Positions 2,342 to 13,420 of a DNA stretch of 64,000 nucleotides are shown here, piece after piece. The translations under genes were made by a program, and so were the position numbers. Each line of letters starts with the position of its first letter. Position 1 is the first letter of the stretch. Where the stretch lies: IMG/VR virus record IMGVR_UViG_3300044712_001937, positions 1 to 64,000 of that record; one strand, given 5' to 3'. Below the pieces are notes generated by a model. It was not told the DNA's origin and made no database searches. It was given only the letters and a program-made list of their open reading frames with translations.

Positions 2342-4837
2342 TTAACTATTTCTGAATTCTATTGGAGCACTTATTGCACCAACAGTACCACTCATATATA
2401 TTTTATAATTTATATTTGACCAGCAACCTTGTGCTGAACTTACTGCTATAACACATTCATCAGGATATTTATCACTTGGTGCAGAATTAATATTTCCATT
2501 ATCTAAAGCATTTATATACCAACATGTTTTAGATGTTGAAACTGATGGAATTGCAATCCATGTCCATTCACTTGCACTACTACTAAATGTAACATTTACA
2601 GTACCGCTACTACATGCAAGTATTTTATTACCACCAACAACAAGTCCAGATGTTACACTTGGGCGTAATCCACTGGTTAATTTTCCATAATAATATGGAT
2701 ATATACCAGTTAAACTTGCAGTTACAGTTGCAGTACATCCTGTAGGTAATGGATTGTCATAAATACCACCTTTACTATTATATGGTTGAACACCTGCACA
2801 ATATTGAGCAAAACTACTCCAAGATTGTGAACCTATAACTACAGGATAATTAATAACATTTAACATATAAGGTGTTGAAGTATTAGGATAAAAACCAGCT
2901 ATTTGTGCACCTGTAAAACAATATCCATTAACACCACAACTTCTTTTATCACATATTGCAGTATATTGTGGATTTATACAACCAGCATTAAATGTACTAA
3001 CTACTGATAATGTTGGAATAGAACAACCTACCTCATATAATGAAGTTGATGGCGAGAATGTTGTAGTTACAGATGGAATAATTAATGTCGGATATTGTAC
3101 TGGAACCAATATTTCTTCAAATAATTGGAAAGCTGTTTTACCAGTTAATATTGTTCCCGGTGTAATTCCACCTACAGAACATACTGCGGGTGAACTTAAA
3201 TTATATTTATCGGTACTTGACCCACCCGTAGTATATATTACTATAGTATCATTTTTAAGTTTTACTTGAGTACTTCCACTACCTATAAAACTTCTAAGTC
3301 TTAAATTATGTGAAGTAACTCCTGTACTAACACCAACACCTGTTCCCATATTTGATACACTTGTAATTCCACTATATGTACCAAAACTACCACTTGTTCC
3401 TGAATAAGTGCCACCAGATATATATATAAAAGCATCATCATAAATAATTTTTATTTTACTTGAATCTGCACTTAAAATTGTTCTAAAACGAAGACTTTTA
3501 TCTACTTTATTATTAAATACAGGACCTCCTACGTTATAAGTCGTACCAGTATTTAAACTACCATTAACATCAAAACTAATATATCCATTAGTATAAAAAC
3601 CATCACTATAATCCCCACCTATTGATGAAAATTCAATATCGTTAAATACTATTCCGGGGTATTGATATGATGTTAAAAATAACCCAATATTATGAGTAAT
3701 ATCTCCATTAACGAATATCCAACCATTTTTATCACCACCAGTTGTTTTATAATTATAAATCCAAGATTTATTAGGTGAAAAATTACTTAAATACCCACGT
3801 CTTAGTGGTTGACCAGTTGGTGCACCAAGTCTAATATATCCATCAGTATCTCTGTAATAATAATTATATAAAGATGTATATGTACCTTGAAATTGAATTT
3901 GTGAAGTAACCATATACATTGTTTGTACACCTGTTTTACCTGAAAAAAATCCAATATTAGTCGCACCAGTTACAGTTTTATCTAAATAAACTTTAGTATT
4001 ACCAGTATAAGTATTAAATACACTATAACTAACGCTTGATGCAGTTTCAGTAATACCTCTATATTGTAAAACAATACCTGTATTATTTTTAGTTCCAACG
4101 AGCATTGGTTTATTTATAACATTAATTCCAGTTGGTTTTACTGGTGTTAATTTACCAATCGTACTTGATAAATAATATAAAGTACCCCCGCTAATAGGTC
4201 TATTATTAACATCTAAAATTTCAATAGTAGAAATATTACCAGCGTATGTTAATGTAAATCCACTACCATAATCAAACGGATATATTATATCATAATCACT
4301 TTCAGTAACAATACCTAATGGTTCAATAGTGTTTGCATTTGCATTTGAAACTTTCATAAATACACCACCATAATTTTTAGTGTAACCAATAACATCACCA
4401 ACTACAAAAGAATGCAAAGCTTGTACATATTTTTTACTAATATTTTCACCTTGATTTTGAATTGTAGTAGTCGAAAATAAAGGATACCAATTTAAATTAT
4501 TACCAAGAGCTGCAACTTTAGATGAGTTTGTTGGATATAAAGTATTCCATTGGTCTATTGTAATATAATTATCATTATACTTTGGATGTAAATGATAAAT
4601 TTCATTAGTGCTAAGAACATGAACTAACATTCCAAGTCTACGCTGACCTGACGATATTCCATCAAATTCAATTCTATTATTAATACTATCCACTGGTATT
4701 GCATTTCTATCAAGAGTTGTTTTTACTTCCATAAAACCACCAACTCCAAGTACCGAATGATGTGTACCATAAGTATCTCCTGAAGAACCTCTTACTATTG
4801 GAGAAGCTAATACCGTACCTTTATAATATTCTGCCAT
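2342..4837 (-). CDS. Tail-fibre-like/structural protein, Gly/Thr/Ser-rich, Cys-rich C-terminus
   Basis: 831 aa ORF; shares the SVGGITPGT...FEEILVP module with the adjacent gene; low-complexity G/T/S composition. Confidence 0.55.
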   Translation of the reverse strand: MAEYYKGTVLASPIVRGSSGDTYGTHHSVLGVGGFMEVKTTLDRNAIPVDSINNRIEFDGISSGQRRLGMLVHVLSTNEIYHLHPKYNDNYITIDQWNTLYPTNSSKVAALGNNLNWYPLFSTTTIQNQGENISKKYVQALHSFVVGDVIGYTKNYGGVFMKVSNANANTIEPLGIVTESDYDIIYPFDYGSGFTLTYAGNISTIEILDVNNRPISGGTLYYLSSTIGKLTPVKPTGINVINKPMLVGTKNNTGIVLQYRGITETASSVSYSVFNTYTGNTKVYLDKTVTGATNIGFFSGKTGVQTMYMVTSQIQFQGTYTSLYNYYYRDTDGYIRLGAPTGQPLRRGYLSNFSPNKSWIYNYKTTGGDKNGWIFVNGDITHNIGLFLTSYQYPGIVFNDIEFSSIGGDYSDGFYTNGYISFDVNGSLNTGTTYNVGGPVFNNKVDKSLRFRTILSADSSKIKIIYDDAFIYISGGTYSGTSGSFGTYSGITSVSNMGTGVGVSTGVTSHNLRLRSFIGSGSTQVKLKNDTIVIYTTGGSSTDKYNLSSPAVCSVGGITPGTILTGKTAFQLFEEILVPVQYPTLIIPSVTTTFSPSTSLYEVGCSIPTLSVVSTFNAGCINPQYTAICDKRSCGVNGYCFTGAQIAGFYPNTSTPYMLNVINYPVVIGSQSWSSFAQYCAGVQPYNSKGGIYDNPLPTGCTATVTASLTGIYPYYYGKLTSGLRPSVTSGLVVGGNKILACSSGTVNVTFSSSASEWTWIAIPSVSTSKTCWYINALDNGNINSAPSDKYPDECVIAVSSAQGCWSNINYKIYMSGTVGAISAPIEFRNS

Positions 4838-4862
4838 TTTTATATTTTATTTTATAATTTTA

Positions 4863-5936
4863 TTAACTAATAGCTATACAATATGTTCCAGAAATTCTAC
4901 TATCTGACCTTGCTACGTAATATGATGTACAATAATTATTTTTGTTTTTAAACATCATTGTAAATAATGAGCCAATACCTACATTACCCCATGCATTATT
5001 AGGTAATCCATTTATTGTAAATGAAGGAGTACCCATAACACTTGGATATGCATAATAAAAGAATTCATTATTAAATGTCATCGACATACTCGTTGTTTTA
5101 ATATTACATAATTGAGAAGTAATTGTATTGCACATAAGAGTACATGTTCCAGTACAATTTCCACTATAATATGGTGTTGAAGATTTAAAACAATATCTTC
5201 TATTCATCCATGTTATCTTAGTACAAGAAATTACACTTATTTGACCAGTATTTTTAGCACAAATACCATAATCAGCGAATGTACATAATTCATTTCCAGT
5301 AGGTATTACAATGTAATCAAATTCAGGAGGTATTATATATGGTGTATAATCCATAATATTACCACCTGCGTATGTTGTAGGATAGCAATGAGCTGGATTA
5401 GATGTCCAATTACAATTAAAATCAATATATGGGTCACCTACCGTATCTATATATATTCCACAAATAGGACTTGTCGTTTTATTAGCATACCAACTTAGAC
5501 AACCTACAGAATAATCACCAAATTCTCTACAATTTGCAGAAATACTACCACCACTATAACCATTATAAACTGAAATTCCAATACTTGGCGGTAATTCAGG
5601 TACTAATATATTTTGAAGAATTGTTGAAATAGGACAATTACTGATATTACTTCCTGCAATTAATCCACCTACAGTTATACTTGTTGGAGATGCACCACTA
5701 TATATACCTCCACCTTCAGCACCTGATACCACTTCTAATGTAATTTTACCATTACGATATGTTAATACTTCTCCATTAGTTCCACCTGTTGCAATAACGG
5801 GAATAAATCCGGAATCACCTCTTAAAGTTAAACCAGTTACATTTACAAATCTTGTAGTTCCTGATAATGTTAATGCGCTTCCACTTATTTGTTTAAATTG
5901 TAAGTCTTCAAGGTTTGGACGACTAAAAAACGACAT
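4863..5936 (-). CDS. Fibre-like/structural protein paralogous in part to 2342..4837
   Basis: 357 aa ORF; ITVGGLIAGS...ILQNILVP module; C-terminal YYAYP motif; many Cys. Confidence 0.5.
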   Translation of the reverse strand: MSFFSRPNLEDLQFKQISGSALTLSGTTRFVNVTGLTLRGDSGFIPVIATGGTNGEVLTYRNGKITLEVVSGAEGGGIYSGASPTSITVGGLIAGSNISNCPISTILQNILVPELPPSIGISVYNGYSGGSISANCREFGDYSVGCLSWYANKTTSPICGIYIDTVGDPYIDFNCNWTSNPAHCYPTTYAGGNIMDYTPYIIPPEFDYIVIPTGNELCTFADYGICAKNTGQISVISCTKITWMNRRYCFKSSTPYYSGNCTGTCTLMCNTITSQLCNIKTTSMSMTFNNEFFYYAYPSVMGTPSFTINGLPNNAWGNVGIGSLFTMMFKNKNNYCTSYYVARSDSRISGTYCIAIS

Positions 5937-6135: not shown

Positions 6136-7233
6136 TTAAAGTTTAAATTTATTTTGCATTTTTGCTTTTTTTCTAAGTTCATTAACTTCTCTCAATGCAT
6201 TTGGGTTATAAATTTCACGTTTCACTATTGACACAAGATGATTAAATTCACTTTCAGTTATTGCTTGTCCTACATACCCCTCATTTTTCAATATATAACT
6301 TTTAGGAGCTGAACTTGATGCTGAAGGATTACCTTCTGAATCAATAGTACTTTCAAATGTCATCTCAAGCAATTCCTGAATTTTTTCAGTAACATTTGCA
6401 GTAATTTTCTGCTTAGTCTTTTTCAATGCCTTTTCAAGCATATCAACTACATTCTCCTGATGATTTCTTTTTACTTCAGCATATGCCATAGTAAAATCTT
6501 TCATTGGTGAACTATGTTTAAGTTCAGAAATTATAGCTAATGAACCATAACAGTCACGAATCATTAAATTCCAAACTTGTTCAGCATATGTGAACGATGG
6601 AAATTTATCAATTGCAACAATTTCTCCTTCAATAAAAACAATCATTCCAATCATTTTCTTAGGACGTTCAAAATGTGCAATAAATTGTTCAAGTTTTTTA
6701 TCATACTTGCTAAAATATACATCTAAATAATTACCAGCAGATGATTGAGTATCTATACCTAATTTATTAATCGCAGGATAAATTCTTGAATATCCGGGTG
6801 CTGTTCCAACAGTATTAAATACCATTTCACGCATAGTTACTGGAAGCATACGGAATTCTTGAGTACCTCTAAAAGTACCACCTTGAGAACCTTGGACACA
6901 TCCAGCATCATTATAAGTAACATTTGCTCCTTTAGCAATATAACCTGCCTTAGTCATACCGTGATTTTGAGCAACTTGCTTTGTCATAACAGCCATTTGT
7001 GTAGGTACAATTACTTCTTTACTTTCTTTATTTTGAAAGTTTATTTGTCCATATGAACTATTACCAGCTACTAATGCTGTTAATGGGTTTGCAAACCGAG
7101 TATCTAATGAATATTCTGAATCTGTTGTTAAACCAACAATTTGCATATTCAATATAGATTGAACTATGATGTTACCATCATTATCCTTGATAGGACGGCA
7201 ACCTTTAAGTAATTCTGTAAATTCTCTTGTCAT
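6136..7233 (-). CDS. ARPP-like (ARG/rhodanese-phosphatase-associated) domain protein
   Basis: 365 aa; motifs KQVAQNHGM, AGCVQGSQGG and GMIVFIEGEIVAID resemble ARPP-family proteins as recalled (no HMM run); starts 12 nt after the vWA gene stop. Confidence 0.5.
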   Translation of the reverse strand: MTREFTELLKGCRPIKDNDGNIIVQSILNMQIVGLTTDSEYSLDTRFANPLTALVAGNSSYGQINFQNKESKEVIVPTQMAVMTKQVAQNHGMTKAGYIAKGANVTYNDAGCVQGSQGGTFRGTQEFRMLPVTMREMVFNTVGTAPGYSRIYPAINKLGIDTQSSAGNYLDVYFSKYDKKLEQFIAHFERPKKMIGMIVFIEGEIVAIDKFPSFTYAEQVWNLMIRDCYGSLAIISELKHSSPMKDFTMAYAEVKRNHQENVVDMLEKALKKTKQKITANVTEKIQELLEMTFESTIDSEGNPSASSSAPKSYILKNEGYVGQAITESEFNHLVSIVKREIYNPNALREVNELRKKAKMQNKFKL

Positions 7234-7245
7234 AGTATATATTTT

Positions 7246-8874
7246 TTAAACGTTTACACTAATTTTTTTTGACCTTTTAACTGGTGCAGCTTCAAGAGCC
7301 AACATTTGAGTTTCAAGCCATCTTTTTGTATCAATTTCAAGCAATCTTGCAGTAATTTGTGGTTGAATTGCACTTGGGTTACTTATTGCCATTGGAACTA
7401 CACTTGTACCTAATTTACGTACATTAGCACCCATTTCTGCACTTGTTATTGGCGAAATCTGAAACATTGGAGTATTTCTACCAGTTTCTGTTTGCCAAAT
7501 CGAAATAACCTCATTAGTTAATCCATCATAAGCATTTTCATAGCCATCAGTTATGATAAAAATAGCATCATAAGGTTTTGACGAATTTTCAACTTTCAAT
7601 AATCCAATAAATGAACTTGCTAAATCAGTTACTTCACCACCAGTTACAACAATATTAGTTAATTCCGCAGATTTACCCAATACTTTTGCTGTAAAATCAG
7701 CAATTGCTTTTGGAGTATTCTTTGATTCAATTTTATCACCTGACATTGAATTACTATCATCAACAATAATTCCAATATTTTTATAATAGAAATTATTGAT
7801 TCTTTTCTTAATAGCAAGTTTATCTATTGCTGAAATTATTTCAGGAGTAAATGATGTTTCATAACCAGTTTTATATAAAGCCAAGAAATCTGTTGCTTTA
7901 TCCATATCAACAGTCTTTTCAACACCCAACTTTGCAGTTGATTTTGTTTGACGGATTTGTTGATTTGTTGATGTAACTTCAACATTCTTTCTGATTAAAG
8001 CTTTAGTTGCTTGTTTTTGAATATCAGTAGACCACATTGAATGATATTGTGGATGTTTAACACTTGAAATTAATCCAAGTAAAACTTCTTCCGGAACATT
8101 TTTAATTCCAGTAATATCAACCTTTGCTTTTAAATATTCACTCAACAATGGAAAATCTAAAGCTGGATAATTTACACCATTATCTTTTTTAAATAAAAAA
8201 AGAAATAATTTAAACGCACGTGAAGCATCACCATTAAAATATTTTAATATATATTCATTAATAATATTACTTTCCTTTTCAGTTGTAACGCCATTTGAAT
8301 ATACAACAAGTTTACGAGCAATTGAAAGCAATATAGATGTTTTCTTTTGACCATATACATGTTTTAAAATTTCAGCAATTTTATTTCGATATTTTAATGA
8401 AAAAAATTCAAGATTTGATTGTCCCCAAATATATCCAAGAATAATTTTTCTTGTCCTTTCATTATTTACTTTAGAATTTTTTAAATCAACAAAAAGACGT
8501 AACACATAAGGTAAACCATTATCTGCAAGATTATCTAATGATGATAATATTGCTTTATCACTTAAACCATTATCATACCAATCAATAGGATTAACAATAT
8601 TACATGCACCTCCCTTTAATGTATTTTTTAATTCATTAAGCAATACTTCAGATATAAATCGACCAGTAGCACCTTTTTGGGTTGCAATAATCAATGGGAG
8701 TTCTTTTGAAAGCATATACATATTCTTAATTTGAGATTGTATTGCTTTCAATTGTTCATCTTTAGAGTGGTAATAAGTAGCACTGCTCTTAGCACCACTT
8801 GCCACTGTCAAACCATCAGTAATTGATTGCTTAACTGTAGACAACATGTTGTTTGTTAATACCAAATTTTTCAT
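7246..8874 (-). CDS. Helical N-terminal region + C-terminal vWA (MIDAS) protein, TROVE/Ro60-like architecture
   Basis: 542 aa; MIDAS-type IIVDDSNSMSG and FIITDGYEN in the C-terminal ~180 aa; the preceding ~350 aa look alpha-helical and Lys/Leu-rich. vWA call is solid; TROVE relationship is inferred. Confidence 0.6.
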   Translation of the reverse strand: MKNLVLTNNMLSTVKQSITDGLTVASGAKSSATYYHSKDEQLKAIQSQIKNMYMLSKELPLIIATQKGATGRFISEVLLNELKNTLKGGACNIVNPIDWYDNGLSDKAILSSLDNLADNGLPYVLRLFVDLKNSKVNNERTRKIILGYIWGQSNLEFFSLKYRNKIAEILKHVYGQKKTSILLSIARKLVVYSNGVTTEKESNIINEYILKYFNGDASRAFKLFLFLFKKDNGVNYPALDFPLLSEYLKAKVDITGIKNVPEEVLLGLISSVKHPQYHSMWSTDIQKQATKALIRKNVEVTSTNQQIRQTKSTAKLGVEKTVDMDKATDFLALYKTGYETSFTPEIISAIDKLAIKKRINNFYYKNIGIIVDDSNSMSGDKIESKNTPKAIADFTAKVLGKSAELTNIVVTGGEVTDLASSFIGLLKVENSSKPYDAIFIITDGYENAYDGLTNEVISIWQTETGRNTPMFQISPITSAEMGANVRKLGTSVVPMAISNPSAIQPQITARLLEIDTKRWLETQMLALEAAPVKRSKKISVNV

Positions 8875-8960
8875 CTTACTAAATTTAAATTTTTGTTACA
8901 GTTATATTTATAAAAAATCAAAAATACATAAATTAATTTAATTAATCACAATAATAAACA

Positions 8961-9010
8961 AAAAAAATGGGCAAGTATTGTATAATTTCTTATACAAATC
9001 CCCGCCCATT
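8961..9010 (-). terminator. Terminator-like hairpin with GAAA tetraloop at the 3' end of the ncRNA cluster
   Basis: Minus strand: AATGGGC-gggga-t-TTGTATAA-gaaa-TTATACAA-tactt-GCCCATT followed by a T run. Confidence 0.6.
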
Positions 9011-9053
9011 AATTTTTGGAAAAATAAATCTTCTCAATAAGAGAAGAAGTTTA

Positions 9054-9119
9054 GTTGTATTTTTACAAGTTTGTGCCACCACTATCGGATGGCAAATTTC
9101 AATTTGCTGTATACACAAC
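9054..9119 (-). ncRNA. Stand-alone copy of the repeated RNA motif (element B)
   Basis: Minus strand: GTTGTGTATACAGCAAA ... TGCCA/TGGCA hairpin ... TGTAAAAATACAAC; terminal 7-bp stem GTTGTGT/ATACAAC. Confidence 0.55.
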
Positions 9120-9322
9120 AAGTTCTTCCATAATGCTTTTTTTTGAAAAACTCCCACACTTCTGTGGCAGAAAACCATTTTTAACCTTCAAATGTTAGAT
9201 GATACTACCCTTTTTATAAGTAAAATTTCTCGTATCAAGAACTGAAAAACACCACAAATTACGGTATTGTGGACAACCACTTCAAACATCCTTTGGATGA
9301 TGATAATATTTCGGGAATATTG

Positions 9323-9440
9323 TAAAAGTATTTTTGTTTTTGTGCAAGTTTAAGAGACTTGTGCCTTAACCACTTGGCTATTTTTCAATTTTGGCTGAAA
9401 AAGTCGGAGTCGAACCAACGAATTTACTGTAAATACTTTA
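9323..9440 (-). ncRNA. Circularly permuted tRNA-Lys(CUU)-like RNA closed by the repeated motif (element D)
   Basis: Minus-strand order: motif strand 1, T arm (GTTGG-TTCGACT-CCGAC), acceptor 3' TTTTTCA-G-CCA, linker AAAT, acceptor 5' TGAAAAA, D arm GCCAAGTGGTTAAGGC, anticodon arm CAAGT-CTCTTAA-ACTTG, motif strand 2. Confidence 0.75.
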
Positions 9441-9557
9441 AGTTTTCCCTTATGCTGTACCTCAAAGTTTGAATTGCTTCAGGGACAATGAGGAATTCCA
9501 TTCACACGGTTACGTTAACTTTCGTTAAGAGGCTTGACCGTGCATCACGTTTATATT

Positions 9558-10187
9558 TTAAAGAACTCTACCAAATGACCAACCAATTGGTATTGTATCA
9601 TTAGTTTTTATTTTTTTATTTTCATTACCGTTTGTAATCCAACGAGTATTATATTGAGAATTATTTTCACCACAGTTTTTACCTTTATGAACTTTCTTCA
9701 TCAACATTATTGTTTCATTAGAATGTTTCTTACCATCCCAATATCCATTCATTCCATTTTTGCTCAAAAATTCTTTTTGACCTATAGATTGCTTTTTGCA
9801 TTGATTATTTCTCCATTCATCGTTATTCATTAATTCAATAAAACGTTTATTACCCTTTTTAGAATTTATGATTTGTTGTTCATGAGAAAATCCTCCAGTA
9901 CCACCAACACGTAAATTAATACATTTAGGGTCTAACAATAGAGAATCATTAACCAATTCATTTTCTCTTAAAGCCAAAGAACTTCGGTCAGAATAATATT
10001 CAAGCACTTCTAATTTAAAATTTTCTTTGCCATATTTATTTATCGACCTTTTCAATCTTTTTCCACTTCCCAAATAATCATCATTTAAATTATTTGTAGA
10101 ATGCATTCCAATATAAAATTCACCTTTTATTAAATTGGTTGTTTTATAAATAAAATGATATTTTTTTAACTCATTTAAATTTGCCAT
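9558..10187 (-). mobile_element. Free-standing GIY-YIG (Seg-like) homing endonuclease
   Basis: HFIYKTTNLIKGEFYIGMHST, YLGSGK, conserved E; NUMOD3-like KKHSNET motif. Confidence 0.85.
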
Positions 10188-10238
10188 ATCAAAACAATAT
10201 TTTGATATAAATACTAAACAAATTCAAAAAAGTCCAAG

Positions 10239-10373
10239 TGGGGAGAATTGGAATCGAACCAATAATCAACTGTTTTCAAGACAATTTGCTTTACCTTTAC
10301 TGAAAACACCATTAGTTTTCTCACTTAAGAGAACATTGAGATAGTATTTTTTGTTTATTTTTGCTATCTCCCC
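10239..10373 (-). ncRNA. tRNA-like RNA with ~60-nt motif-bearing insertion in the D-loop (element E)
   Basis: Acceptor GGGGAGA/TCTCCCC-A, T arm ATTGG-TTCGATT-CCAAT, anticodon arm ATTGT-CTTGAAA-ACAGT; D region interrupted by AAAAAATAC...GTGTTTTCAGTAAA; no encoded CCA. Confidence 0.7.
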
Positions 10374-10400
10374 ATATTTAAAATTTTAAAGAACTTCAAA

Positions 10401-10429
10401 AAATGAAGAGTTTTTAATTCTTCATTTTG
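10401..10429 (-). terminator. Terminator-like hairpin
   Basis: AAAATGAAGA/TCTTCATTTT inverted repeat followed by T on the minus strand; AT-rich, so weak. Confidence 0.4.
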
Positions 10430-10439
10430 TATGTTAAAT

Positions 10440-10542
10440 TTAAGGTGGCGCAGACCTATTATGGCTGTCATTTTCTGTCATTACATCAGAACCACAAATT
10501 ACGGTTGGGTTAACCAGCAACTACATTTCTGCATTTCGTAAT
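10440..10542 (-). ncRNA. Putative structured ncRNA downstream of tRNA-Met (element G)
   Basis: Non-coding and locally GC-richer; stems GATTACG/CGTAATT, GTTG/CAAC and TTCTG/CAGAA; shares an exact 15-mer with 9251..9265. Confidence 0.4.
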
Positions 10543-10555
10543 CTTAAATTTTTCG

Positions 10556-10627
10556 TAGCGGAAGCAGGACTCGAACCTACGACCTTTTGGTTATGAGCCA
10601 AACGAGATGCCGCTTCTCTATTCCGCA
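10556..10627 (-). tRNA. tRNA-Met(CAU), initiator-like
   Basis: Full cloverleaf: TGCGGAA/TTCCGCT-A with a 1:72 mismatch, D stem GAGA/TCTC, TTTGG-CTCATAA-CCAAA, GTAGG-TTCGAGT-CCTGC; CCA not encoded. Confidence 0.92.
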
Positions 10628-10641
10628 ATATATTTTTAATT

Positions 10642-11061
10642 TTAATATCTATTAGAAACACATTCTTTACAATGTCCATTTACACCATTCCATCTTCGAT
10701 TGCATTTATGAAATTCTTCCATTTTTTTCATCTTTTTACATTTTGAACAAAATGAATATCCTTCTTTACATTTAATTCTTTTATGGAAACCTCCGAATCT
10801 TCTTTCAGGTAAATTACATTTCATATGACTAAATGCAATATTATCTAAACTAAAAAACAACTCTTTAGGATTTTCACTATGAAGCCAATTTTCCTTATGT
10901 TCAATACTTAATTCATCAACATTTAAAATTGGCTTTTTACATTTAAAACAAATATTCTCATTCAATTTACATAATAAATGAAATAATATTTGTTTTCTTA
11001 ATTTACCAGATGCAGTACCTAAAGGCATTCCTAATTGTGCATCTTTATCTTTACAACTCAT
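10642..11061 (-). CDS. HNH endonuclease with CxxC zinc knuckles
   Basis: CFKC...SIEHKE...NIAFSHMKCN (HNH-type) plus C-terminal CSKC/CKEC. Confidence 0.7.
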   Translation of the reverse strand: MSCKDKDAQLGMPLGTASGKLRKQILFHLLCKLNENICFKCKKPILNVDELSIEHKENWLHSENPKELFFSLDNIAFSHMKCNLPERRFGGFHKRIKCKEGYSFCSKCKKMKKMEEFHKCNRRWNGVNGHCKECVSNRY

Positions 11062-11094
11062 TATCCTATGATATTTAGTTATAATTATTTTTTG

Positions 11095-11227
11095 TGGGGA
11101 AGGTCAGAATCGAACTGACAATCAATTGTTTTAACGACAACTTGCTGTACCTTTACTGTAAATATAGCCAGTTCTCCAAAAGGAGTAATACGATTATATT
11201 TTTTGTATATAATTTGCATACTTCCCC
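11095..11227 (-). ncRNA. tRNA-like RNA with motif-bearing D-loop insertion (element F), paralog of element E
   Basis: Acceptor GGGGAAG/CTTCCCC-A, T arm GTCAG-TTCGATT-CTGAC, anticodon arm GTTGT-CGTTAAA-ACAAT; insertion AAAAAATAT...ATATTTACAGTAAA. Confidence 0.7.
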
Positions 11228-11281
11228 AAATATTTTTTTTACATAATGTAAAAGAACTTTTTTCTTATCTCTAAGACGATA

Positions 11282-11313
11282 CAAACATACAACACCTTTT
11301 TTTATTTTCCAAA
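11282..11313 (-). promoter_or_regulatory. Bacteroidota sigma-ABfr-type promoter driving the ncRNA cluster
   Basis: Minus strand TTTG (11313-11310), 20-nt spacer, TATGTTTG (11289-11282): matches the -33 TTTG / -7 TAnnTTTG consensus. Confidence 0.7.
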
Positions 11314-11425
11314 TATTTTTCAATAATATTTTTAAAAAAATGTAAAATAATTTATAATCGTCTGAGAGATAAATACGTTAATAATTCAAAAAAGTCATAT
11401 TTATTTATAAAAAAAATTAAAAATT

Positions 11426-13420
11426 TTATTCTTTTTTTATAACATTCTGACTTTCACGCAATTTAGTAAGTTGATTATGAATATCATTATGTTTATTTTC
11501 CAATTCGTCAGGGTCAATTAATTCATTTTCATTCAATTCTGACGAATCTCTTTCAATATATGGTACTCCCGGAGATACAAATTTCATTTTAAATTCTTCA
11601 GGTTTTTCAACTACAATATCTGGATTTAATAATTCATGTATAGTCTTTTTTTCATCAATTATTAATGGAGTTTCAATTTTAACTTCGTCAGGTTCTGCAT
11701 TTAAAATGGTTTCAGTATCACCCGACCAAGGAAGTAAATCATTAGTTTCTTCATTTATACCCTCACTTACACCCTCATTTATTCCCTCATTTTTAATTAT
11801 TTCAGATTTATAATCCAGTTCAAAATCATCTTTTTTAATAATAGATTCATTTTCAAAATTACTTGATATATTATTAAAATCACTATTATTTATATTATCG
11901 TTATTAATTACGTTTAGAATATTTTCTTCACTATGTTGACTTATTGCAGCGTGTAATTCAATATTAGGTGCTTTAGTTTCTTCATATTTTAACCTCATAC
12001 TTTCTTCCAAAGCATCAATATCTTTATCATCGTGATGTTTAACTGTTTTATTTATTTGACTATATTTATATTGGTCATTTTCAAGTCTAATTTCCATTGT
12101 ATCGTTATTAAATACACAGTCTTTAAATTGTTGACCATCTTGAGCAAATCGTGCTTTTAATATTTGAACATTGGCTAATTGTGCTTCTTTTTGTTCTTTA
12201 GTTTTAGCAACTGACATGAAAAAATGCGCTTTTTGAATTCTTTTAATATTTCCACCAGTTTGATTAGCTTCGATATATTCTGCATTAAAACCAGTACGAT
12301 TAGTTTGTAATGCAGTCCATGCAGGAATTTCAAAATCTGAAGCTAATGCTTCGAATGCTTTAATAACAACTAATTCACCTTCATTTCTATCTTGAGTTTT
12401 TTTATGCGATTCAACACAATCAAGATAATCTAAAATTAAAATATCAAATTTATAACCATATTTTTTTTGATGACGAATCATCCAATTTTTAACATCTTTG
12501 ATAGTAGTATCTTCCTGACTAAATCTTTTAATTACAAGATGACCACCATTACCTTTTAATTCTTCAGCTTTACGATTAATAATATCACTAACTAATTCAA
12601 GATTATCATCGATTTGACTTAAAGGAGTATTAGACCAAATTGCATAATGTTTTCTTTGGATTTGGTCTACAGTATCTTCAAATATAATTTGAGCAACATT
12701 TTTACCTTGTTCATATGCTGTATTTGAAATTTTTGTTAATGCTGTAGTTTTACCAACACCTGAAGGAGTTAATATAACACCAATTTCACCTTTTCCCAAT
12801 CCACCACCAGTTACGGCATCAATAAATTGAATTCCAGTTGGTATGGTTTGACGAAATTCTTTTCTTAAAGCTCTTGATATATTATCGAATACTTCAGTAC
12901 CCTCATCTTCTTTAACACCAATTTGACTTATTTTAATAAATTTTTCTTCAATACTACTAATAGTATATTTATTTTTTATATCACCACTTTTTGTTTTATC
13001 AAGAATATGTTCTGCAACTTTACGATATTCTTGTTGTTTTATAAAAAAATTAGTAGATTTTTGAACTGCATCACCATCATGCATTAAAGATTTATTTAAA
13101 ACTCTTTCATTCCATAACTCAATATTTTTTAATATTGCAAACAAACATTCTTCTTCAATCAAATTTCCCGGTTTTTTGAATTGATGAATTGCTTGAATTA
13201 TACTTTTATTTTGTAGATTAGGTACTTTTTGGTATTCTTTATAAAATTCGTAAATAATTAAATAAAGTCGTTTAACATTAGGGTCATCAAAATATTCAAC
13301 AGCAAGATTTGGTAATACTTCTTCAGCAAATTCAGGTTCAACGAGTAATTGCCACATCAATTTAGTCTGAAAATCATGTCCAAGATAACCTGTAAATGTA
13401 TTTTCGGTTGTTTCACTCAT
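11426..13420 (-). CDS. dnaB: Replicative DnaB/gp41-like helicase with acidic C-terminal extension
   Basis: Walker A LTPSGVGKT, LILDYLD, WTALQTNR, ILKARF motifs. Confidence 0.9.
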   Translation of the reverse strand: MSETTENTFTGYLGHDFQTKLMWQLLVEPEFAEEVLPNLAVEYFDDPNVKRLYLIIYEFYKEYQKVPNLQNKSIIQAIHQFKKPGNLIEEECLFAILKNIELWNERVLNKSLMHDGDAVQKSTNFFIKQQEYRKVAEHILDKTKSGDIKNKYTISSIEEKFIKISQIGVKEDEGTEVFDNISRALRKEFRQTIPTGIQFIDAVTGGGLGKGEIGVILTPSGVGKTTALTKISNTAYEQGKNVAQIIFEDTVDQIQRKHYAIWSNTPLSQIDDNLELVSDIINRKAEELKGNGGHLVIKRFSQEDTTIKDVKNWMIRHQKKYGYKFDILILDYLDCVESHKKTQDRNEGELVVIKAFEALASDFEIPAWTALQTNRTGFNAEYIEANQTGGNIKRIQKAHFFMSVAKTKEQKEAQLANVQILKARFAQDGQQFKDCVFNNDTMEIRLENDQYKYSQINKTVKHHDDKDIDALEESMRLKYEETKAPNIELHAAISQHSEENILNVINNDNINNSDFNNISSNFENESIIKKDDFELDYKSEIIKNEGINEGVSEGINEETNDLLPWSGDTETILNAEPDEVKIETPLIIDEKKTIHELLNPDIVVEKPEEFKMKFVSPGVPYIERDSSELNENELIDPDELENKHNDIHNQLTKLRESQNVIKKE

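What the first reader, a model, noticed from the sequence alone, without database searches (positions are those of the whole stretch)
6136..11313. Candidate new RNP system: a family of tRNA-chimeric RNAs sharing one helix/loop motif, upstream of a vWA (TROVE/Ro60-like) + ARPP-like gene pair
Seen: four minus-strand elements (9054-9119, 9323-9440, 10239-10373, 11095-11227) share a two-strand motif. Strand 1 reads GTGTATACAGCAAA / GTATTTACAGTAAA / GTGTTTTCAGTAAA / ATATTTACAGTAAA, and strand 2 reads AAAAATAC / AAAAATAC / AAAAAATAC / AAAAAATAT. The strands pair with each other, with a compensatory C-G to T-A change in 11095-11227, and leave an A-rich internal loop. The motif is attached in three topologies: alone, inside a tRNA D-loop, and closing a permuted tRNA. 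The cluster starts at a host-type promoter and reads toward the vWA and ARPP-like genes. Established: Ro60/Rsr (TROVE + vWA) binds Y RNAs through a conserved helix, bacterial YrlA Y RNAs carry a permuted tRNA-like domain, and such RNAs are encoded next to rsr. Inference: the motif is the binding site for the 542-aa vWA protein, giving a phage RNP that displays several different tRNA mimics. An alternative is that the motif is a processing/splicing signal removed to yield mature tRNAs.
Basis: partly seen in the sequence, partly recalled or inferred. Interest (0 to 1): 0.92.

Follow-up and report, generated by a model that had tools for sequence, protein, structure and literature searches.

The report
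Ro60-like protein with tRNA-chimeric RNAs
A jumbo phage carries four small RNA genes in which tRNA-like bodies are joined to one shared structured "handle", next to a ring-shaped Ro60-like protein gene and an enzyme-like partner gene. The same three-part set also occurs inside tRNA gene arrays of several bacterial phyla, so it is probably a previously unrecognised RNA-protein system that acts on or imitates tRNA.

Summary
All four minus-strand elements share a structured handle. It consists of a polypurine/polypyrimidine helix (P-a), a loop with AAC, a roughly 10-bp helix (P-b, ..GUGUUU/AAAUAC..), and an asymmetric loop (UWCAG opposite an A-rich strand). The asymmetric loop always faces a tRNA-derived cargo.

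- Both helices covary in 44 and 43 relatives.
- The 542-aa protein has no Pfam, PHROG or PDB sequence match. A high-confidence model (pLDDT 93.9) matches only Ro60/Rsr structures over its full length.
- The next gene is an ARPP-1 protein.
- This pair recurs in jumbo phages and in chromosomes of Planctomycetota, Myxococcota, Bacteroidota and others. ARPP is adjacent in 55 of 62 genome loci.
- In bacteria the pair sits inside dense tRNA arrays, with handle RNAs just upstream (0.41 per kb versus 0.025 per kb elsewhere).
- In a reverse search, every true handle with enough flanking DNA lies beside the protein gene.

Best reading: these are Y-RNA-like RNAs whose handle docks the Ro60-like protein and displays tRNA mimics. 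Binding and function are inferred, not shown. The rival reading, that the handle is a removable splicing or processing signal, is weakened but not excluded. I rate it a new variant of the Ro60/Y-RNA kind, of high interest.

The parts
11095..11227 (-). Element A: a tRNA-like RNA with acceptor GGGGAAG/CUUCCCC, a T arm and an anticodon arm whose loop is CGUUAAA. The capped handle is inserted in the D region.
   Evidence: Read directly. It is a row of alignment A2 with a covarying acceptor, P-a and P-b. Aragorn calls it a tRNA only after the handle is deleted.
10642..11061 (-). HNH-type homing-endonuclease-like ORF lying between RNA genes. It is not part of the system.
   Evidence: Weak Pfam HNH hit. 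DNA similarity to phage HNH homing endonuclease genes.
10555..10627 (-). Ordinary tRNA-Met (CAU). In most relatives it is followed directly by an open handle with a stem-loop cargo; that copy is missing in this window.
   Evidence: Aragorn. Rfam tRNA at 61 bits. Relatives.
10239..10373 (-). Element B: a tRNA-like RNA with acceptor GGGGAGA/UCUCCCC and anticodon loop CUUGAAA, carrying the capped handle in the D region.
   Evidence: Rfam tRNA scores only the 3' part, at 27.1 bits, below the threshold of 29.
9558..10187 (-). GIY-YIG/SegE-like homing endonuclease ORF lying between RNA genes. It is not part of the system.
   Evidence: Pfam GIY-YIG, SegE_GIY-YIG and NUMOD3 hits. Similarity to T4 segA.
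9460..9545 (-). Two conserved leader hairpins ahead of element C: CACGGU..ACCGUG, and CCUCA-UUGUCCCUG..AAACUU-UGAGG.
   Evidence: The stems change in a compensatory way in relatives (CCCGG/CCGGG; ACGCAGU/ACUGCGU), seen in the listings. This was not analysed statistically.
9313..9449 (-). Element C: a circularly permuted tRNA. Its order is handle strand 1, T arm, acceptor 3' strand, GCCA plus a short linker, acceptor 5' strand, D arm, anticodon arm (CUCUUAA), A-rich strand, handle strand 2.
   Evidence: RNAalifold on 43 relatives supports all helices, and 22 of 35 pairs show compensatory changes. Model R1 scores it at 141.8 bits.
9130..9210 (-). Conserved 5' extension of element D: ..CUAACAUUUGA..GGUUAAAAAUGGUUUU-hairpin-UUUUUCAAAAAA.
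   Evidence: Conserved across relatives in the listings. Its function is unknown.
9046..9129 (-). Element D: an open handle enclosing a minihelix-like cargo, made of helix GCAAAUU/AACUUGU plus hairpin GCCAUC..GGUGGC.
   Evidence: The hairpin stem covaries among relatives. R1 hit at 31.7 bits, E = 5.5e-4.
9029..9047 (-). Terminator-like hairpin plus T run. Its 5' arm overlaps the 3'-terminal strand of the handle (CUUCUUC).
   Evidence: Terminator scan.
7246..8874 (-). Gene for a 542-aa Ro60-like protein: a helical-repeat ring plus a C-terminal vWA domain with a MIDAS motif (D372, S374, S376, D443).
   Evidence: Invariant columns. AlphaFold2 model with pLDDT 93.9 and pTM 0.92. The Foldseek top 11 are all Ro60/Rsr, with E from 1e-6 to 5e-3 over about 570 columns and TM 0.32-0.48. 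No Pfam, PHROG or PDB sequence match.
6136..7233 (-). Gene for a 365-aa ARPP-1 domain protein, the conserved partner of the Ro60-like gene.
   Evidence: Pfam PF20208, E = 5.8e-13. A homolog lies immediately downstream of the Ro60-like gene in 55 of 62 genome loci and in both huge-phage clades.
9555..9566 (-). GTTCTTTAAAAT word ahead of an RNA unit. Further copies lie at 10383-10394 and, with one mismatch, at 11246-11257. It is either a cluster-specific promoter or a processing element, and it is complementary to the handle's AAGAAC.
   Evidence: The only exact copies in the window are these. The same word precedes a handle unit in LR756500.1.

Best explanation
The four elements belong to a family of Y-RNA-like non-coding RNAs. 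Each has a conserved structured handle: helix P-a, a loop with AAC, helix P-b, and an asymmetric loop of UWCAG opposite an A-rich strand. Each also has a variable tRNA-derived cargo. The handle is most likely the docking site for the adjacent ring-shaped Ro60-like protein, which works together with the ARPP-1 enzyme-like protein encoded next to it. The resulting particle displays tRNA look-alikes: whole cloverleaves, a permuted tRNA whose acceptor loop can probably be opened to a CCA end, a minihelix, and in relatives a bare anticodon stem-loop. Because the same three-part set sits inside bacterial tRNA arrays, its job is probably tRNA-centred: quality control, repair, protection or decoying of tRNA during infection or stress. 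Shown here: the RNA structure, the protein fold, and the genomic linkage. Inferred: the binding, the role of ARPP-1, and the biological function.
For: RNA structure: P-a is 98.9% paired with compensatory changes at 3 of 4 pairs. P-b is 93.5% paired with compensatory changes at 4 of 7 pairs. The covariation score is 0.452 against 0.190 in shuffles, with 0 of 500 shuffles as high. The same helices appear in 43 permuted tRNAs.
Protein: the only fold matches are Ro60/Rsr/phage Ro60, over the full length, and the MIDAS motif is intact.
Linkage: 75 phage loci carry handles upstream of the gene. In the reverse search, 33 loci have a true handle. Of these, 25 carry the gene and the other 8 have only 137-1151 nt of downstream DNA. 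None of 80 chance-match loci carry the gene. Distant homologs at 35% and 28% identity keep both ARPP-1 and handle RNAs. In bacterial genome loci, handles occur at 0.41 per kb in the 3 kb upstream on the same strand, against 0.025 per kb elsewhere, and 34 of 57 loci are positive.
Cargo: some conserved cargos cannot become tRNAs, namely bare stem-loops and minihelices. This fits a display scaffold better than an intron.
Precedent: YrlA Y RNAs lie next to Ro60 genes, have T-acceptor-D order, and in M. smegmatis are cut by RNase P and receive CCA (PMC4201824). Thermus phage phiLo Ro60 binds two RNAs encoded upstream of its gene (PMC12135203).
Against: There is no direct evidence of binding or transcription. 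The protein fails every sequence test for TROVE, and TM-scores to Ro60 are only 0.32-0.48. The handle lacks the GNCGAA/CGAA Y-RNA motif, and no Rfam Y-RNA family matches. Within phages, co-occurrence could partly reflect synteny. In LR756500.1 the RNAs lie about 3 kb from the gene, with coding genes in between. The crude detector found handles in only 34 of 57 bacterial loci. The strict 'junction faces cargo' topology and the NCCA encoded in 30 of 45 permuted copies also fit a splicing signal.
Confidence: 0.55

Rival explanations
1. The handle is a removable processing or splicing signal, that is, an intron in the D region and a split intron around permuted exons. It would be cut out and the ends ligated to give ordinary, or circular and then re-cut, tRNAs. 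This is analogous to the bulge-helix-bulge processing of permuted tRNA genes in archaea and red algae. The Ro60-like/ARPP-1 pair could be the machinery or could be unrelated.
For: In every topology the 5' part of the cargo is followed by handle strand 2, and the 3' part is preceded by handle strand 1. All tRNA helices covary, so a tRNA shape is under selection. NCCA plus a variable linker follows the acceptor 3' strand in 30 of 45 permuted copies. Intact chimeras are called tRNA in 2 of 44 cases, but in up to 43 of 44 once the handle is deleted. A possible exon 1-handle pairing (GAGAUAG/CUAUCUC) is 82.5% paired, with a few compensatory changes.
Against: No fixed junction could be defined. The lengths on the two sides do not compensate, and the deletion scan gives a broad diagonal rather than a point. 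Conserved cargos include bare stem-loops and minihelices that cannot be tRNAs. About a third of the anticodon loops lack U33. Ser, Tyr and Leu-type anticodons sit on short-variable-loop bodies. The handle is not a 3-4-3 bulge-helix-bulge, and no Rfam ribozyme or intron family matches. No intron-less allele was found. No ligase or splicing endonuclease was found among the 18 window ORFs scanned.
Confidence: 0.2
2. The RNAs and the gene pair are neighbours only because both ride in tRNA arrays or tRNA clusters. On this view the protein pair acts on ordinary tRNAs or on something else. The handle would be bound by a different factor, or would act in cis, for example as an attenuator of the downstream genes.
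For: In bacteria the pair is embedded in arrays of up to 40 same-strand tRNA genes. In this window the last handle strand overlaps the 5' arm of a terminator just ahead of the gene. That arrangement would allow a fold-dependent read-through switch.
Against: Handles concentrate in the roughly 1 kb next to the gene rather than throughout the arrays. The terminator overlap is absent in the distant locus L316. Several handle RNAs per locus, with different cargos, are hard to explain as a single leader. Handle and gene stay together across phage and bacterial contexts that share no other genes.
Confidence: 0.17
3. The handle is a small self-cleaving or self-ligating ribozyme that releases or circularises its cargo without protein.
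For: It has a compact conserved core with invariant unpaired nucleotides (AAC, UWCAG) next to the cargo boundary. The permuted arrangements resemble engineered permuted intron-exon designs.
Against: No known ribozyme family matches at E up to 1. The core is a simple two-helix stem with loops. No conserved cleavage-site context could be defined. Strict linkage to a protein pair would not be expected for an autonomous ribozyme.
Confidence: 0.05

Closest known systems
Ro60/Rsr with Y RNAs, especially bacterial and phage YrlA (Chen et al. 2014, PMC4201824; Thermus phage phiLo Ro60 with Yrl1/Yrl2, PMC12135203)
   Same: A ring-shaped helical-repeat plus vWA/MIDAS protein, with several small RNAs encoded just upstream on the same strand. 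The RNA ends form a long stem with internal loops that carries a tRNA-like module. Element C has the T arm-acceptor-D arm order. The acceptor loop can plausibly be opened by RNase P to give a CCA end.
   Different: The protein is not detectable by the TROVE profile or by sequence against solved Ro60s. It has an obligatory ARPP-1 partner gene rather than RtcB or PNPase contexts. The handle has different conserved nucleotides (AAC, UWCAG, polypurine P-a), lacks the GNCGAA motif, and gives no Rfam hit. The cargos include complete cloverleaves with anticodon arms, D-loop insertions and bare stem-loops. In bacteria the system is embedded in tRNA arrays.
Circularly permuted and intron-containing tRNA genes processed at bulge-helix-bulge motifs (Cyanidioschyzon merolae, some archaea)
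   Same: The gene order in element C is 3' half, linker, 5' half. One motif appears both as an insertion and as the closure of permuted halves.
   Different: The flanking motif is a helix of 5 plus about 10 bp with loops, not a 3-4-3 bulge-helix-bulge. No splicing endonuclease is known in bacteria or found here. Many cargos are not tRNAs.
Two-piece tmRNA from circularly permuted ssrA genes
   Same: It is a permuted tRNA-like gene in bacteria whose product works as two paired pieces. Aragorn even reports a spurious permuted 'tmRNA*' over the handle RNA of Minicystis rosea.
   Different: There is no tag reading frame or pseudoknot architecture, and the conserved core and partner proteins differ.
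tRNA array units of bacteria and mobile elements (PMC4758250, PMC5966550)
   Same: The bacterial homologs lie inside dense same-strand tRNA arrays, for example 40 calls in 11.4 kb in Minicystis rosea.
   Different: The search run here turned up those papers only as tRNA-array surveys and found none linking arrays to a Ro60-like or vWA protein. Their text was not read. The phage window itself has only one ordinary tRNA.
ARG-centred ARPP systems (Iyer et al. 2022, PMC9503650)
   Same: The ARPP-1 domain protein is paired with a vWA-containing protein.
   Different: There is no ADP-ribosylglycohydrolase, rhodanese-phosphatase, HIRAN, WYL or deacetylase partner. Here the vWA domain caps a Ro60-like ring, and the context is tRNA or other RNA.

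Membership tests
Ro60/TROVE proteins | Helical-repeat (HEAT) ring closed by a C-terminal vWA domain | tested here: met
   AlphaFold2 model with pLDDT 93.9 and pTM 0.92. The Foldseek top 11 PDB matches are all Ro60/Rsr/phiLo Ro60, aligned over about 570 columns, with E from 1e-6 to 5e-3. The next match has E = 0.07. TM-scores are only 0.32-0.48.
Ro60/TROVE proteins | MIDAS motif (DxSxS ... D) in the vWA domain | tested here: met
   D372 and D443 are invariant, and S374 and S376 at least 90% conserved, across 86 homologs down to 21% identity.
Ro60/TROVE proteins | Sequence match to the TROVE profile or to solved Ro60 sequences | tested here: not met
   No Pfam hit for the protein. None of the 86 family members matches TROVE at E up to 0.01. 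phmmer and profile searches of PDB sequences find no Ro60.
Ro60/TROVE proteins | Binds Y RNA on the outer surface and RNA ends in the central hole | not testable with these tools
   This needs biochemistry or a protein-RNA co-structure.
Y RNA / YrlA | Encoded next to the Ro60 gene | tested here: met
   The four elements lie 0.2-2.4 kb upstream on the same strand. The same holds in 75 phage loci and in bacterial loci.
Y RNA / YrlA | A stem formed by the 5' and 3' ends, with conserved internal loops, carrying an effector module | tested here: met
   Met for elements C and D. In A and B the same stem is capped and inserted into the tRNA body.
Y RNA / YrlA | Conserved Ro-binding sequence (GNCGAAN0-1G, the CGAA motif) and a match to Rfam Y-RNA models | tested here: not met
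   There is no such conserved motif in alignments A2 and A4. No Y_RNA or YrlA-type Rfam hit appears in the window region at E up to 1, or in 14 related loci at gathering score.
Y RNA / YrlA | tRNA-like domain with T arm, closed acceptor-like stem and D arm in that order | tested here: met
   Element C and 44 relatives. The helices covary. Unlike YrlA, they also keep a full anticodon arm.
Canonical tRNA | Recognised as a cloverleaf by tRNA finders | tested here: not met
   Aragorn finds only tRNA-Met in the window. Rfam tRNA scores parts of C (34.2 bits) and B (27.1, below the threshold of 29). Intact D-loop chimeras are called in 2 of 44 cases, against up to 43 of 44 after the handle is deleted.
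Canonical tRNA | U33, and for Ser/Tyr/Leu anticodons a long variable arm | tested here: not met
   Element A has the loop CGUUAAA. Many relatives have CNGUAAA, CAGUUAA or CAGUGAA. Bodies with UGA, GUA or UAA anticodons have variable loops of 4-5 nt. Elements B and C do have U33.
Bulge-helix-bulge tRNA introns / permuted tRNA genes | Permuted order of the halves (3' half before 5' half) | tested here: met
   Element C and 44 relatives.
Bulge-helix-bulge tRNA introns / permuted tRNA genes | A 3-nt bulge, 4-bp helix, 3-nt bulge at the exon-intron junctions | tested here: not met
   The junction is an asymmetric loop (3-4 nt opposite 7-9 or more A-rich nt) next to a 10-bp helix.
Bulge-helix-bulge tRNA introns / permuted tRNA genes | Spliced or circular products and a cognate endonuclease and ligase | not testable with these tools
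   No RNA-seq data are available here. No ligase or endonuclease domain was found in the 18 window ORFs scanned, but about 45 ORFs were not scanned.
Known ribozymes and self-splicing introns | Match to an Rfam ribozyme or intron model | tested here: not met
   cmscan at E up to 1 over 8700-11500 returns only tRNA hits.
ARPP-1 domain proteins | Match to Pfam PF20208 above its cut-off | tested here: met
   49.3 bits against a cut-off of 27, E = 5.8e-13. The precomputed Pfam record lists PF20208 for the neighbour of the distant homolog in L316.

The most novel reading that the evidence does not exclude
The Ro60-like ring and the ARPP-1 enzyme together form a protein-dependent RNA cutting-and-joining or end-modifying machine that recognises the handle. 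It would splice D-loop chimeras and re-join permuted halves into working tRNAs or circular RNAs. That would be the first tRNA splicing and permutation system of this type in bacteria and phages. ARPP-1 would supply chemistry on the ribose or phosphate at RNA ends.
Probability: 0.12. Interest if true: 0.95.

Novelty: new variant of a known kind. Interest (0 to 1): 0.8.

Why it matters
Ro60/Y-RNA particles are a long-studied but poorly understood RNA surveillance system. This result would add a second, sequence-invisible branch with three components. The first is a defined RNA handle. The second is an enzyme-like partner, ARPP-1, whose substrate is unknown. The third is a set of tRNA chimeras, including permuted tRNA genes, which are otherwise known mainly from algae and archaea. 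It links jumbo phages to bacterial tRNA arrays and suggests a tRNA-centred role in phage-host conflict. It also provides cultured bacteria in which the biology can be tested, including Rhodopirellula, Stieleria, Thalassoglobus and Minicystis rosea. Finally, the handle is a compact, portable protein-docking module tolerated at three different sites of a tRNA scaffold.

Tried and rejected
- The exact 14-mer scan of viral contigs gave mostly chance hits in AT-rich DNA and was discarded.
- A search for intron-less alleles of element B found only unrelated normal tRNAs.
- I tried to pin down splice junctions by asking whether the nucleotides left on the two sides of the handle sum to a constant. 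They do not. The aragorn deletion scan gives a broad diagonal and cannot fix a junction.
- I considered hammerhead and hairpin ribozyme cores and dropped both. I found no resemblance to either core when reading the sequence, and no Rfam ribozyme family matched at E up to 1.
- I considered whether the UU before CAG completes the D stem of element B. This was dropped because those bases pair with AA of AAAUAC in P-b.
- The recurrent viral hits AAGGGAACUGAAAGUGUUUUCAGUAAC looked like a handle in other phages. They turned out to be a coding stretch of a helicase-like gene.
- Pfam, PHROG and PDB sequence searches of the 542-aa protein were all negative.
- The first structure model, built from 16 close homologs, was poor (pLDDT 62.9). 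It was replaced by one built from 86 diverse homologs.
- Literature searches for permuted tRNA in phages, for ARPP with RNA, and for tRNA arrays with vWA or Ro60 found no description of this system. The library is incomplete, so this is not proof of absence.

Full report
**1. What is in the sequence**

On the minus strand between 11227 and 9046 lies a cluster of small RNA genes interrupted by two homing-endonuclease-like ORFs (HNH at 10642-11061, GIY-YIG at 9558-10187). Aragorn finds only one ordinary tRNA in the whole 64-kb window, tRNA-Met at 10555-10627. All four are on the minus strand and inside the cluster, against 0.07 expected by chance.

- Elements A (11095-11227) and B (10239-10373) have a 7-bp acceptor stem, a T arm and an anticodon arm. 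Each carries an insert of about 65 nt in the D region.
- Element C is a circularly permuted tRNA. Its order is T arm, acceptor 3' strand, GCCA plus the linker AAAU, acceptor 5' strand, D arm, anticodon arm.
- Element D encloses a short helix plus a hairpin.

**2. The shared motif is a larger structured handle**

Homologs of the 542-aa protein brought in 75 related phage loci, many from contigs of 200-365 kb. The window itself lies on a 364.7-kb contig. These loci show a conserved unit:

- Strand 1 reads polypurine-AAC, then 1-3 nt, then NNNGUGUUU, then WCAGUAA(A/U), followed by the cargo.
- Strand 2 reads cargo, then an A-rich stretch, then AAAUACNNN, then 4-6 nt, then polypyrimidine.

Two helices form. 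P-a pairs GAAGAA/UUCUUC, GGGAA/UUCCC or GAGAG/CUCUC. P-b is about 10 bp.

In 44 distinct D-loop chimeras, P-a is 98.9% paired with compensatory changes at 3 of 4 pairs. P-b is 93.5% paired with compensatory changes at 4 of 7 pairs. The acceptor stem is 99.3% paired with compensatory changes at 6 of 7 pairs. The whole-structure covariation score is 0.452 against 0.190 for shuffles (0 of 500 as high), and every slid register collapses to about 50% pairing.

RNAalifold on 43 permuted tRNAs recovers P-a, P-b and all four tRNA helices. Of 35 pairs, 22 show compensatory changes.

The junction loop always faces the cargo. In A and B the handle is capped at P-a and enters the D region. In C and D it is open at P-a, and the cargo closes the other end. 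Relatives add two more topologies: a handle after tRNA-Met enclosing a bare stem-loop, and a handle in the variable loop of a non-permuted tRNA.

**3. The proteins**

The 542-aa protein has no Pfam, PHROG or PDB sequence match. It belongs to a large family of 330 representative clusters, reaching down to about 21-25% identity. None of 86 members matches the TROVE profile, and only a few match vWA profiles weakly. A family profile finds no Ro60 among PDB sequences.

The invariant D372 and D443, with the at least 90%-conserved S374 and S376, form a MIDAS motif. A model built from 16 close homologs was poor but already pointed to Ro60. A model built from 86 diverse homologs is confident (pLDDT 93.9, pTM 0.92). 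Its only significant PDB fold matches are eleven Ro60/Rsr/phage Ro60 chains, aligned over about 570 columns with E from 1e-6 to 5e-3. The next hit has E = 0.07. TM-scores are modest, 0.32-0.48.

I therefore call it Ro60-like by architecture, not a sequence member of TROVE. The next gene, at 6136-7233, is an ARPP-1 domain protein (E = 5.8e-13). Its describers regard that domain as a probable enzyme with conserved Cys and Gln that acts on sugar moieties (PMC9503650).

**4. Linkage of RNA and genes**

Forward direction: handle RNAs lie within about 0.2-3 kb upstream of the gene in the related phages.

Reverse direction: a handle pattern scanned over all viral contigs returned 113 new loci. Thirty-three have a true handle, defined as polypurine plus a partner strand. 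Twenty-five of these carry the Ro60-like gene. The other eight have only 137-1151 nt of DNA downstream. None of the 80 chance or coding matches carries the gene.

Deep divergence:

- A homolog at 35% identity in GC-richer DNA (L316/L317) keeps ARPP-1 downstream. Directly upstream it keeps a handle, GGGGAAC-G-GAGUGUUAU-UACAGUAAA ... AUAACGCUC-AAG-UCCCC. This handle brackets a whole tRNA-like body and is followed by a terminator.
- The only homolog in the phage record collection searched (INPHARED) is an uncultured 462-kb phage at 27.8% identity (LR756500.1). It has ARPP-1 downstream and a D-loop chimera about 3 kb upstream.
- A scan of one genome per prokaryotic species found 62 loci, mostly in chromosomes of Planctomycetota, Myxococcota and Bacteroidota, with single loci in a few other lineages. 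ARPP-1 is immediately downstream in 55 of them, and four of the seven exceptions are cut off by the contig end.

In these bacterial loci the pair sits inside dense same-strand tRNA arrays. Ninety-nine of 100 Rfam hits in 13 loci are tRNA, and Minicystis rosea has 40 aragorn calls in 11.4 kb. Between the last tRNAs and the gene lie handle RNAs with the consensus GRGRAC-U-N4-CGUCAW-UWCAG ... WUGAC-CNGCAAC-pyrimidines. Their cargos are a whole tRNA body, an anticodon stem-loop such as AACGG-CUGUAAA-CCGUU, or a permuted tRNA.

A crude detector finds 60 handles in 148 kb of same-strand upstream sequence (0.41 per kb), against 25 in 994 kb elsewhere (0.025 per kb). Thirty-four of 57 testable loci are positive. 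A covariance model built only from phage permuted tRNAs also picks up elements just upstream of the gene in three bacterial loci (E from 4e-3 to 7e-3), and one about 1.5 kb upstream in the 462-kb phage.

**5. How it most likely works**

The architecture is that of a Y RNA: a terminal stem with conserved loops, joined to an effector module that imitates tRNA, and encoded beside a Ro60-type ring protein. Two precedents are close.

- YrlA RNAs have T arm-acceptor-D arm order. In M. smegmatis they are cut by RNase P and receive CCA while still associated with Rsr (PMC4201824).
- Thermus phage phiLo Ro60 binds two RNAs encoded upstream of its gene (PMC12135203).

I therefore infer that the handle docks the Ro60-like protein. 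I also infer that the particle, together with ARPP-1, presents tRNA look-alikes.

NCCA plus a variable linker follows the acceptor 3' strand in 30 of 45 permuted copies. This suggests that many are opened at the acceptor loop into two pieces that the handle clamps together.

The anticodon loops evolve fast and often lack U33, for example CNGUAAA, CAGUUAA and CAGUGAA. Ser, Tyr and Leu-type anticodons sit on bodies with short variable loops. This argues for mimicry rather than decoding. The tRNA-array context points to a tRNA-centred role such as surveillance, repair, protection or decoying. That role is inference only.

**6. Rival readings**

The splicing reading is attractive because the topology is what an intron or permuted intron would give, and because deleting the handle makes up to 43 of 44 chimeras look like tRNAs, against 2 of 44 intact. 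Several results count against it:

- No junction can be fixed.
- Several conserved cargos cannot be tRNAs.
- The motif is not a bulge-helix-bulge.
- No ribozyme or intron family matches.
- No intron-less allele was found.
- No ligase or endonuclease appears among the ORFs scanned.

A possible pairing between the 5' acceptor strand and the handle in B-type chimeras (82.5% paired, few compensatory changes) remains unexplained. It could mark an alternative fold.

Pure neighbourhood without interaction is made unlikely by the concentration of handles next to the gene, and by their joint retention across unrelated genomic contexts.

**7. Novelty**

Ro60 with tRNA-like Y RNAs is known in bacteria and phages. 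What differs here:

- a protein family invisible to TROVE profiles;
- a fixed ARPP-1 partner;
- a different RNA handle;
- cargos that include complete and permuted cloverleaves;
- residence in tRNA arrays.

I found no description of this in the searchable literature. I class it as a new variant of a known kind.

Noticed in passing
window 9555-9566, 10383-10394, 11246-11257 (minus); L380 about 2020-2035: The word GTTCTTTAAAAT (one mismatch in the third copy) sits 15-30 nt ahead of each RNA unit and nowhere else in the window as an exact match. It also precedes a handle unit in the distant huge phage LR756500.1. It is complementary to the handle's AAGAAC, so it could be a dedicated promoter, a processing site or an alternative pairing partner.
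   Followed up: partly
window 9029-9047 and 9046-9060 (minus): The terminator hairpin after element D shares its 5' arm (CUUCUUCUC) with the last strand of helix P-a. Handle folding and terminator folding may therefore be mutually exclusive, which would give a possible read-through switch ahead of the Ro60-like gene. The overlap is present in close relatives but not in the distant locus L316.
   Followed up: partly
window 9460-9545 (minus): Two conserved hairpins precede the permuted tRNA. Their stem sequences differ between relatives while the pairing is kept (CCUCA/UGAGG against CCCGG/CCGGG; CACGGU/ACCGUG against ACGCAGU/ACUGCGU). Their loops are conserved (UUGUCCCUG..AAACUU; AAGCCUCUUA.CGAAAGU).
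   Followed up: no
window 9130-9210 (minus): Element D has a long conserved 5' extension, ..CUAACAUUUGA..GGUUAAAAAUGGUUUU-hairpin-UUUUUCAAAAAA, seen in most relatives. The real RNA may be about 170-200 nt long.
   Followed up: no
window 10491-10505 and 9251-9265 (minus): The same 15-mer, ACCGTAATTTGTGGT, occurs in the spacer after tRNA-Met and in the spacer after element C. Its meaning is unknown.
   Followed up: no
window 10400-10555 (minus): In most relatives tRNA-Met is followed directly by an open handle with a stem-loop cargo (UUUGA-CGGUAAA-UCAGA). This window lacks that handle and instead has a hairpin plus T run (AUGAAGA..UCUUCAU-UUUUU).
   Followed up: partly
window 9558-10187 and 10642-11061 (minus): A GIY-YIG/SegE-like ORF and an HNH-like homing endonuclease ORF are wedged between the RNA genes, as in the T4 tRNA region. 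They are absent from many relatives, so the cluster is a target of mobile endonuclease genes.
   Followed up: partly
L318 (JBAZIW010000001.1): A 362,763-bp scaffold deposited as a 'Candidatus Paceibacterota' genome has the same length as IMG/VR contig 3300029288_000055 and carries the phage-type locus at 74% protein identity. It is probably a jumbo phage genome binned as a bacterium.
   Followed up: no
L324 4686-5236 (Minicystis rosea): Aragorn reports a permuted 'tmRNA*' spanning the handle RNA and the start of the Ro60-like gene. This is almost certainly an artefact caused by the permuted tRNA-like element. It is a warning for automatic annotation of such loci.
   Followed up: no
L319, L323, L324, L350, L362 and others: Dense same-strand tRNA arrays, with up to 40 calls in 11.4 kb, surround the Ro60-like/ARPP-1 pair in chromosomes of Planctomycetota, Myxococcota and a Pseudohongiella MAG. 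The pair may be a general accessory of tRNA arrays.
   Followed up: partly
window 2342-5936 (minus): The two ORFs downstream of ARPP-1 (357 aa and 831 aa) have no Pfam or PHROG match. Whether they travel with the system was not examined.
   Followed up: no
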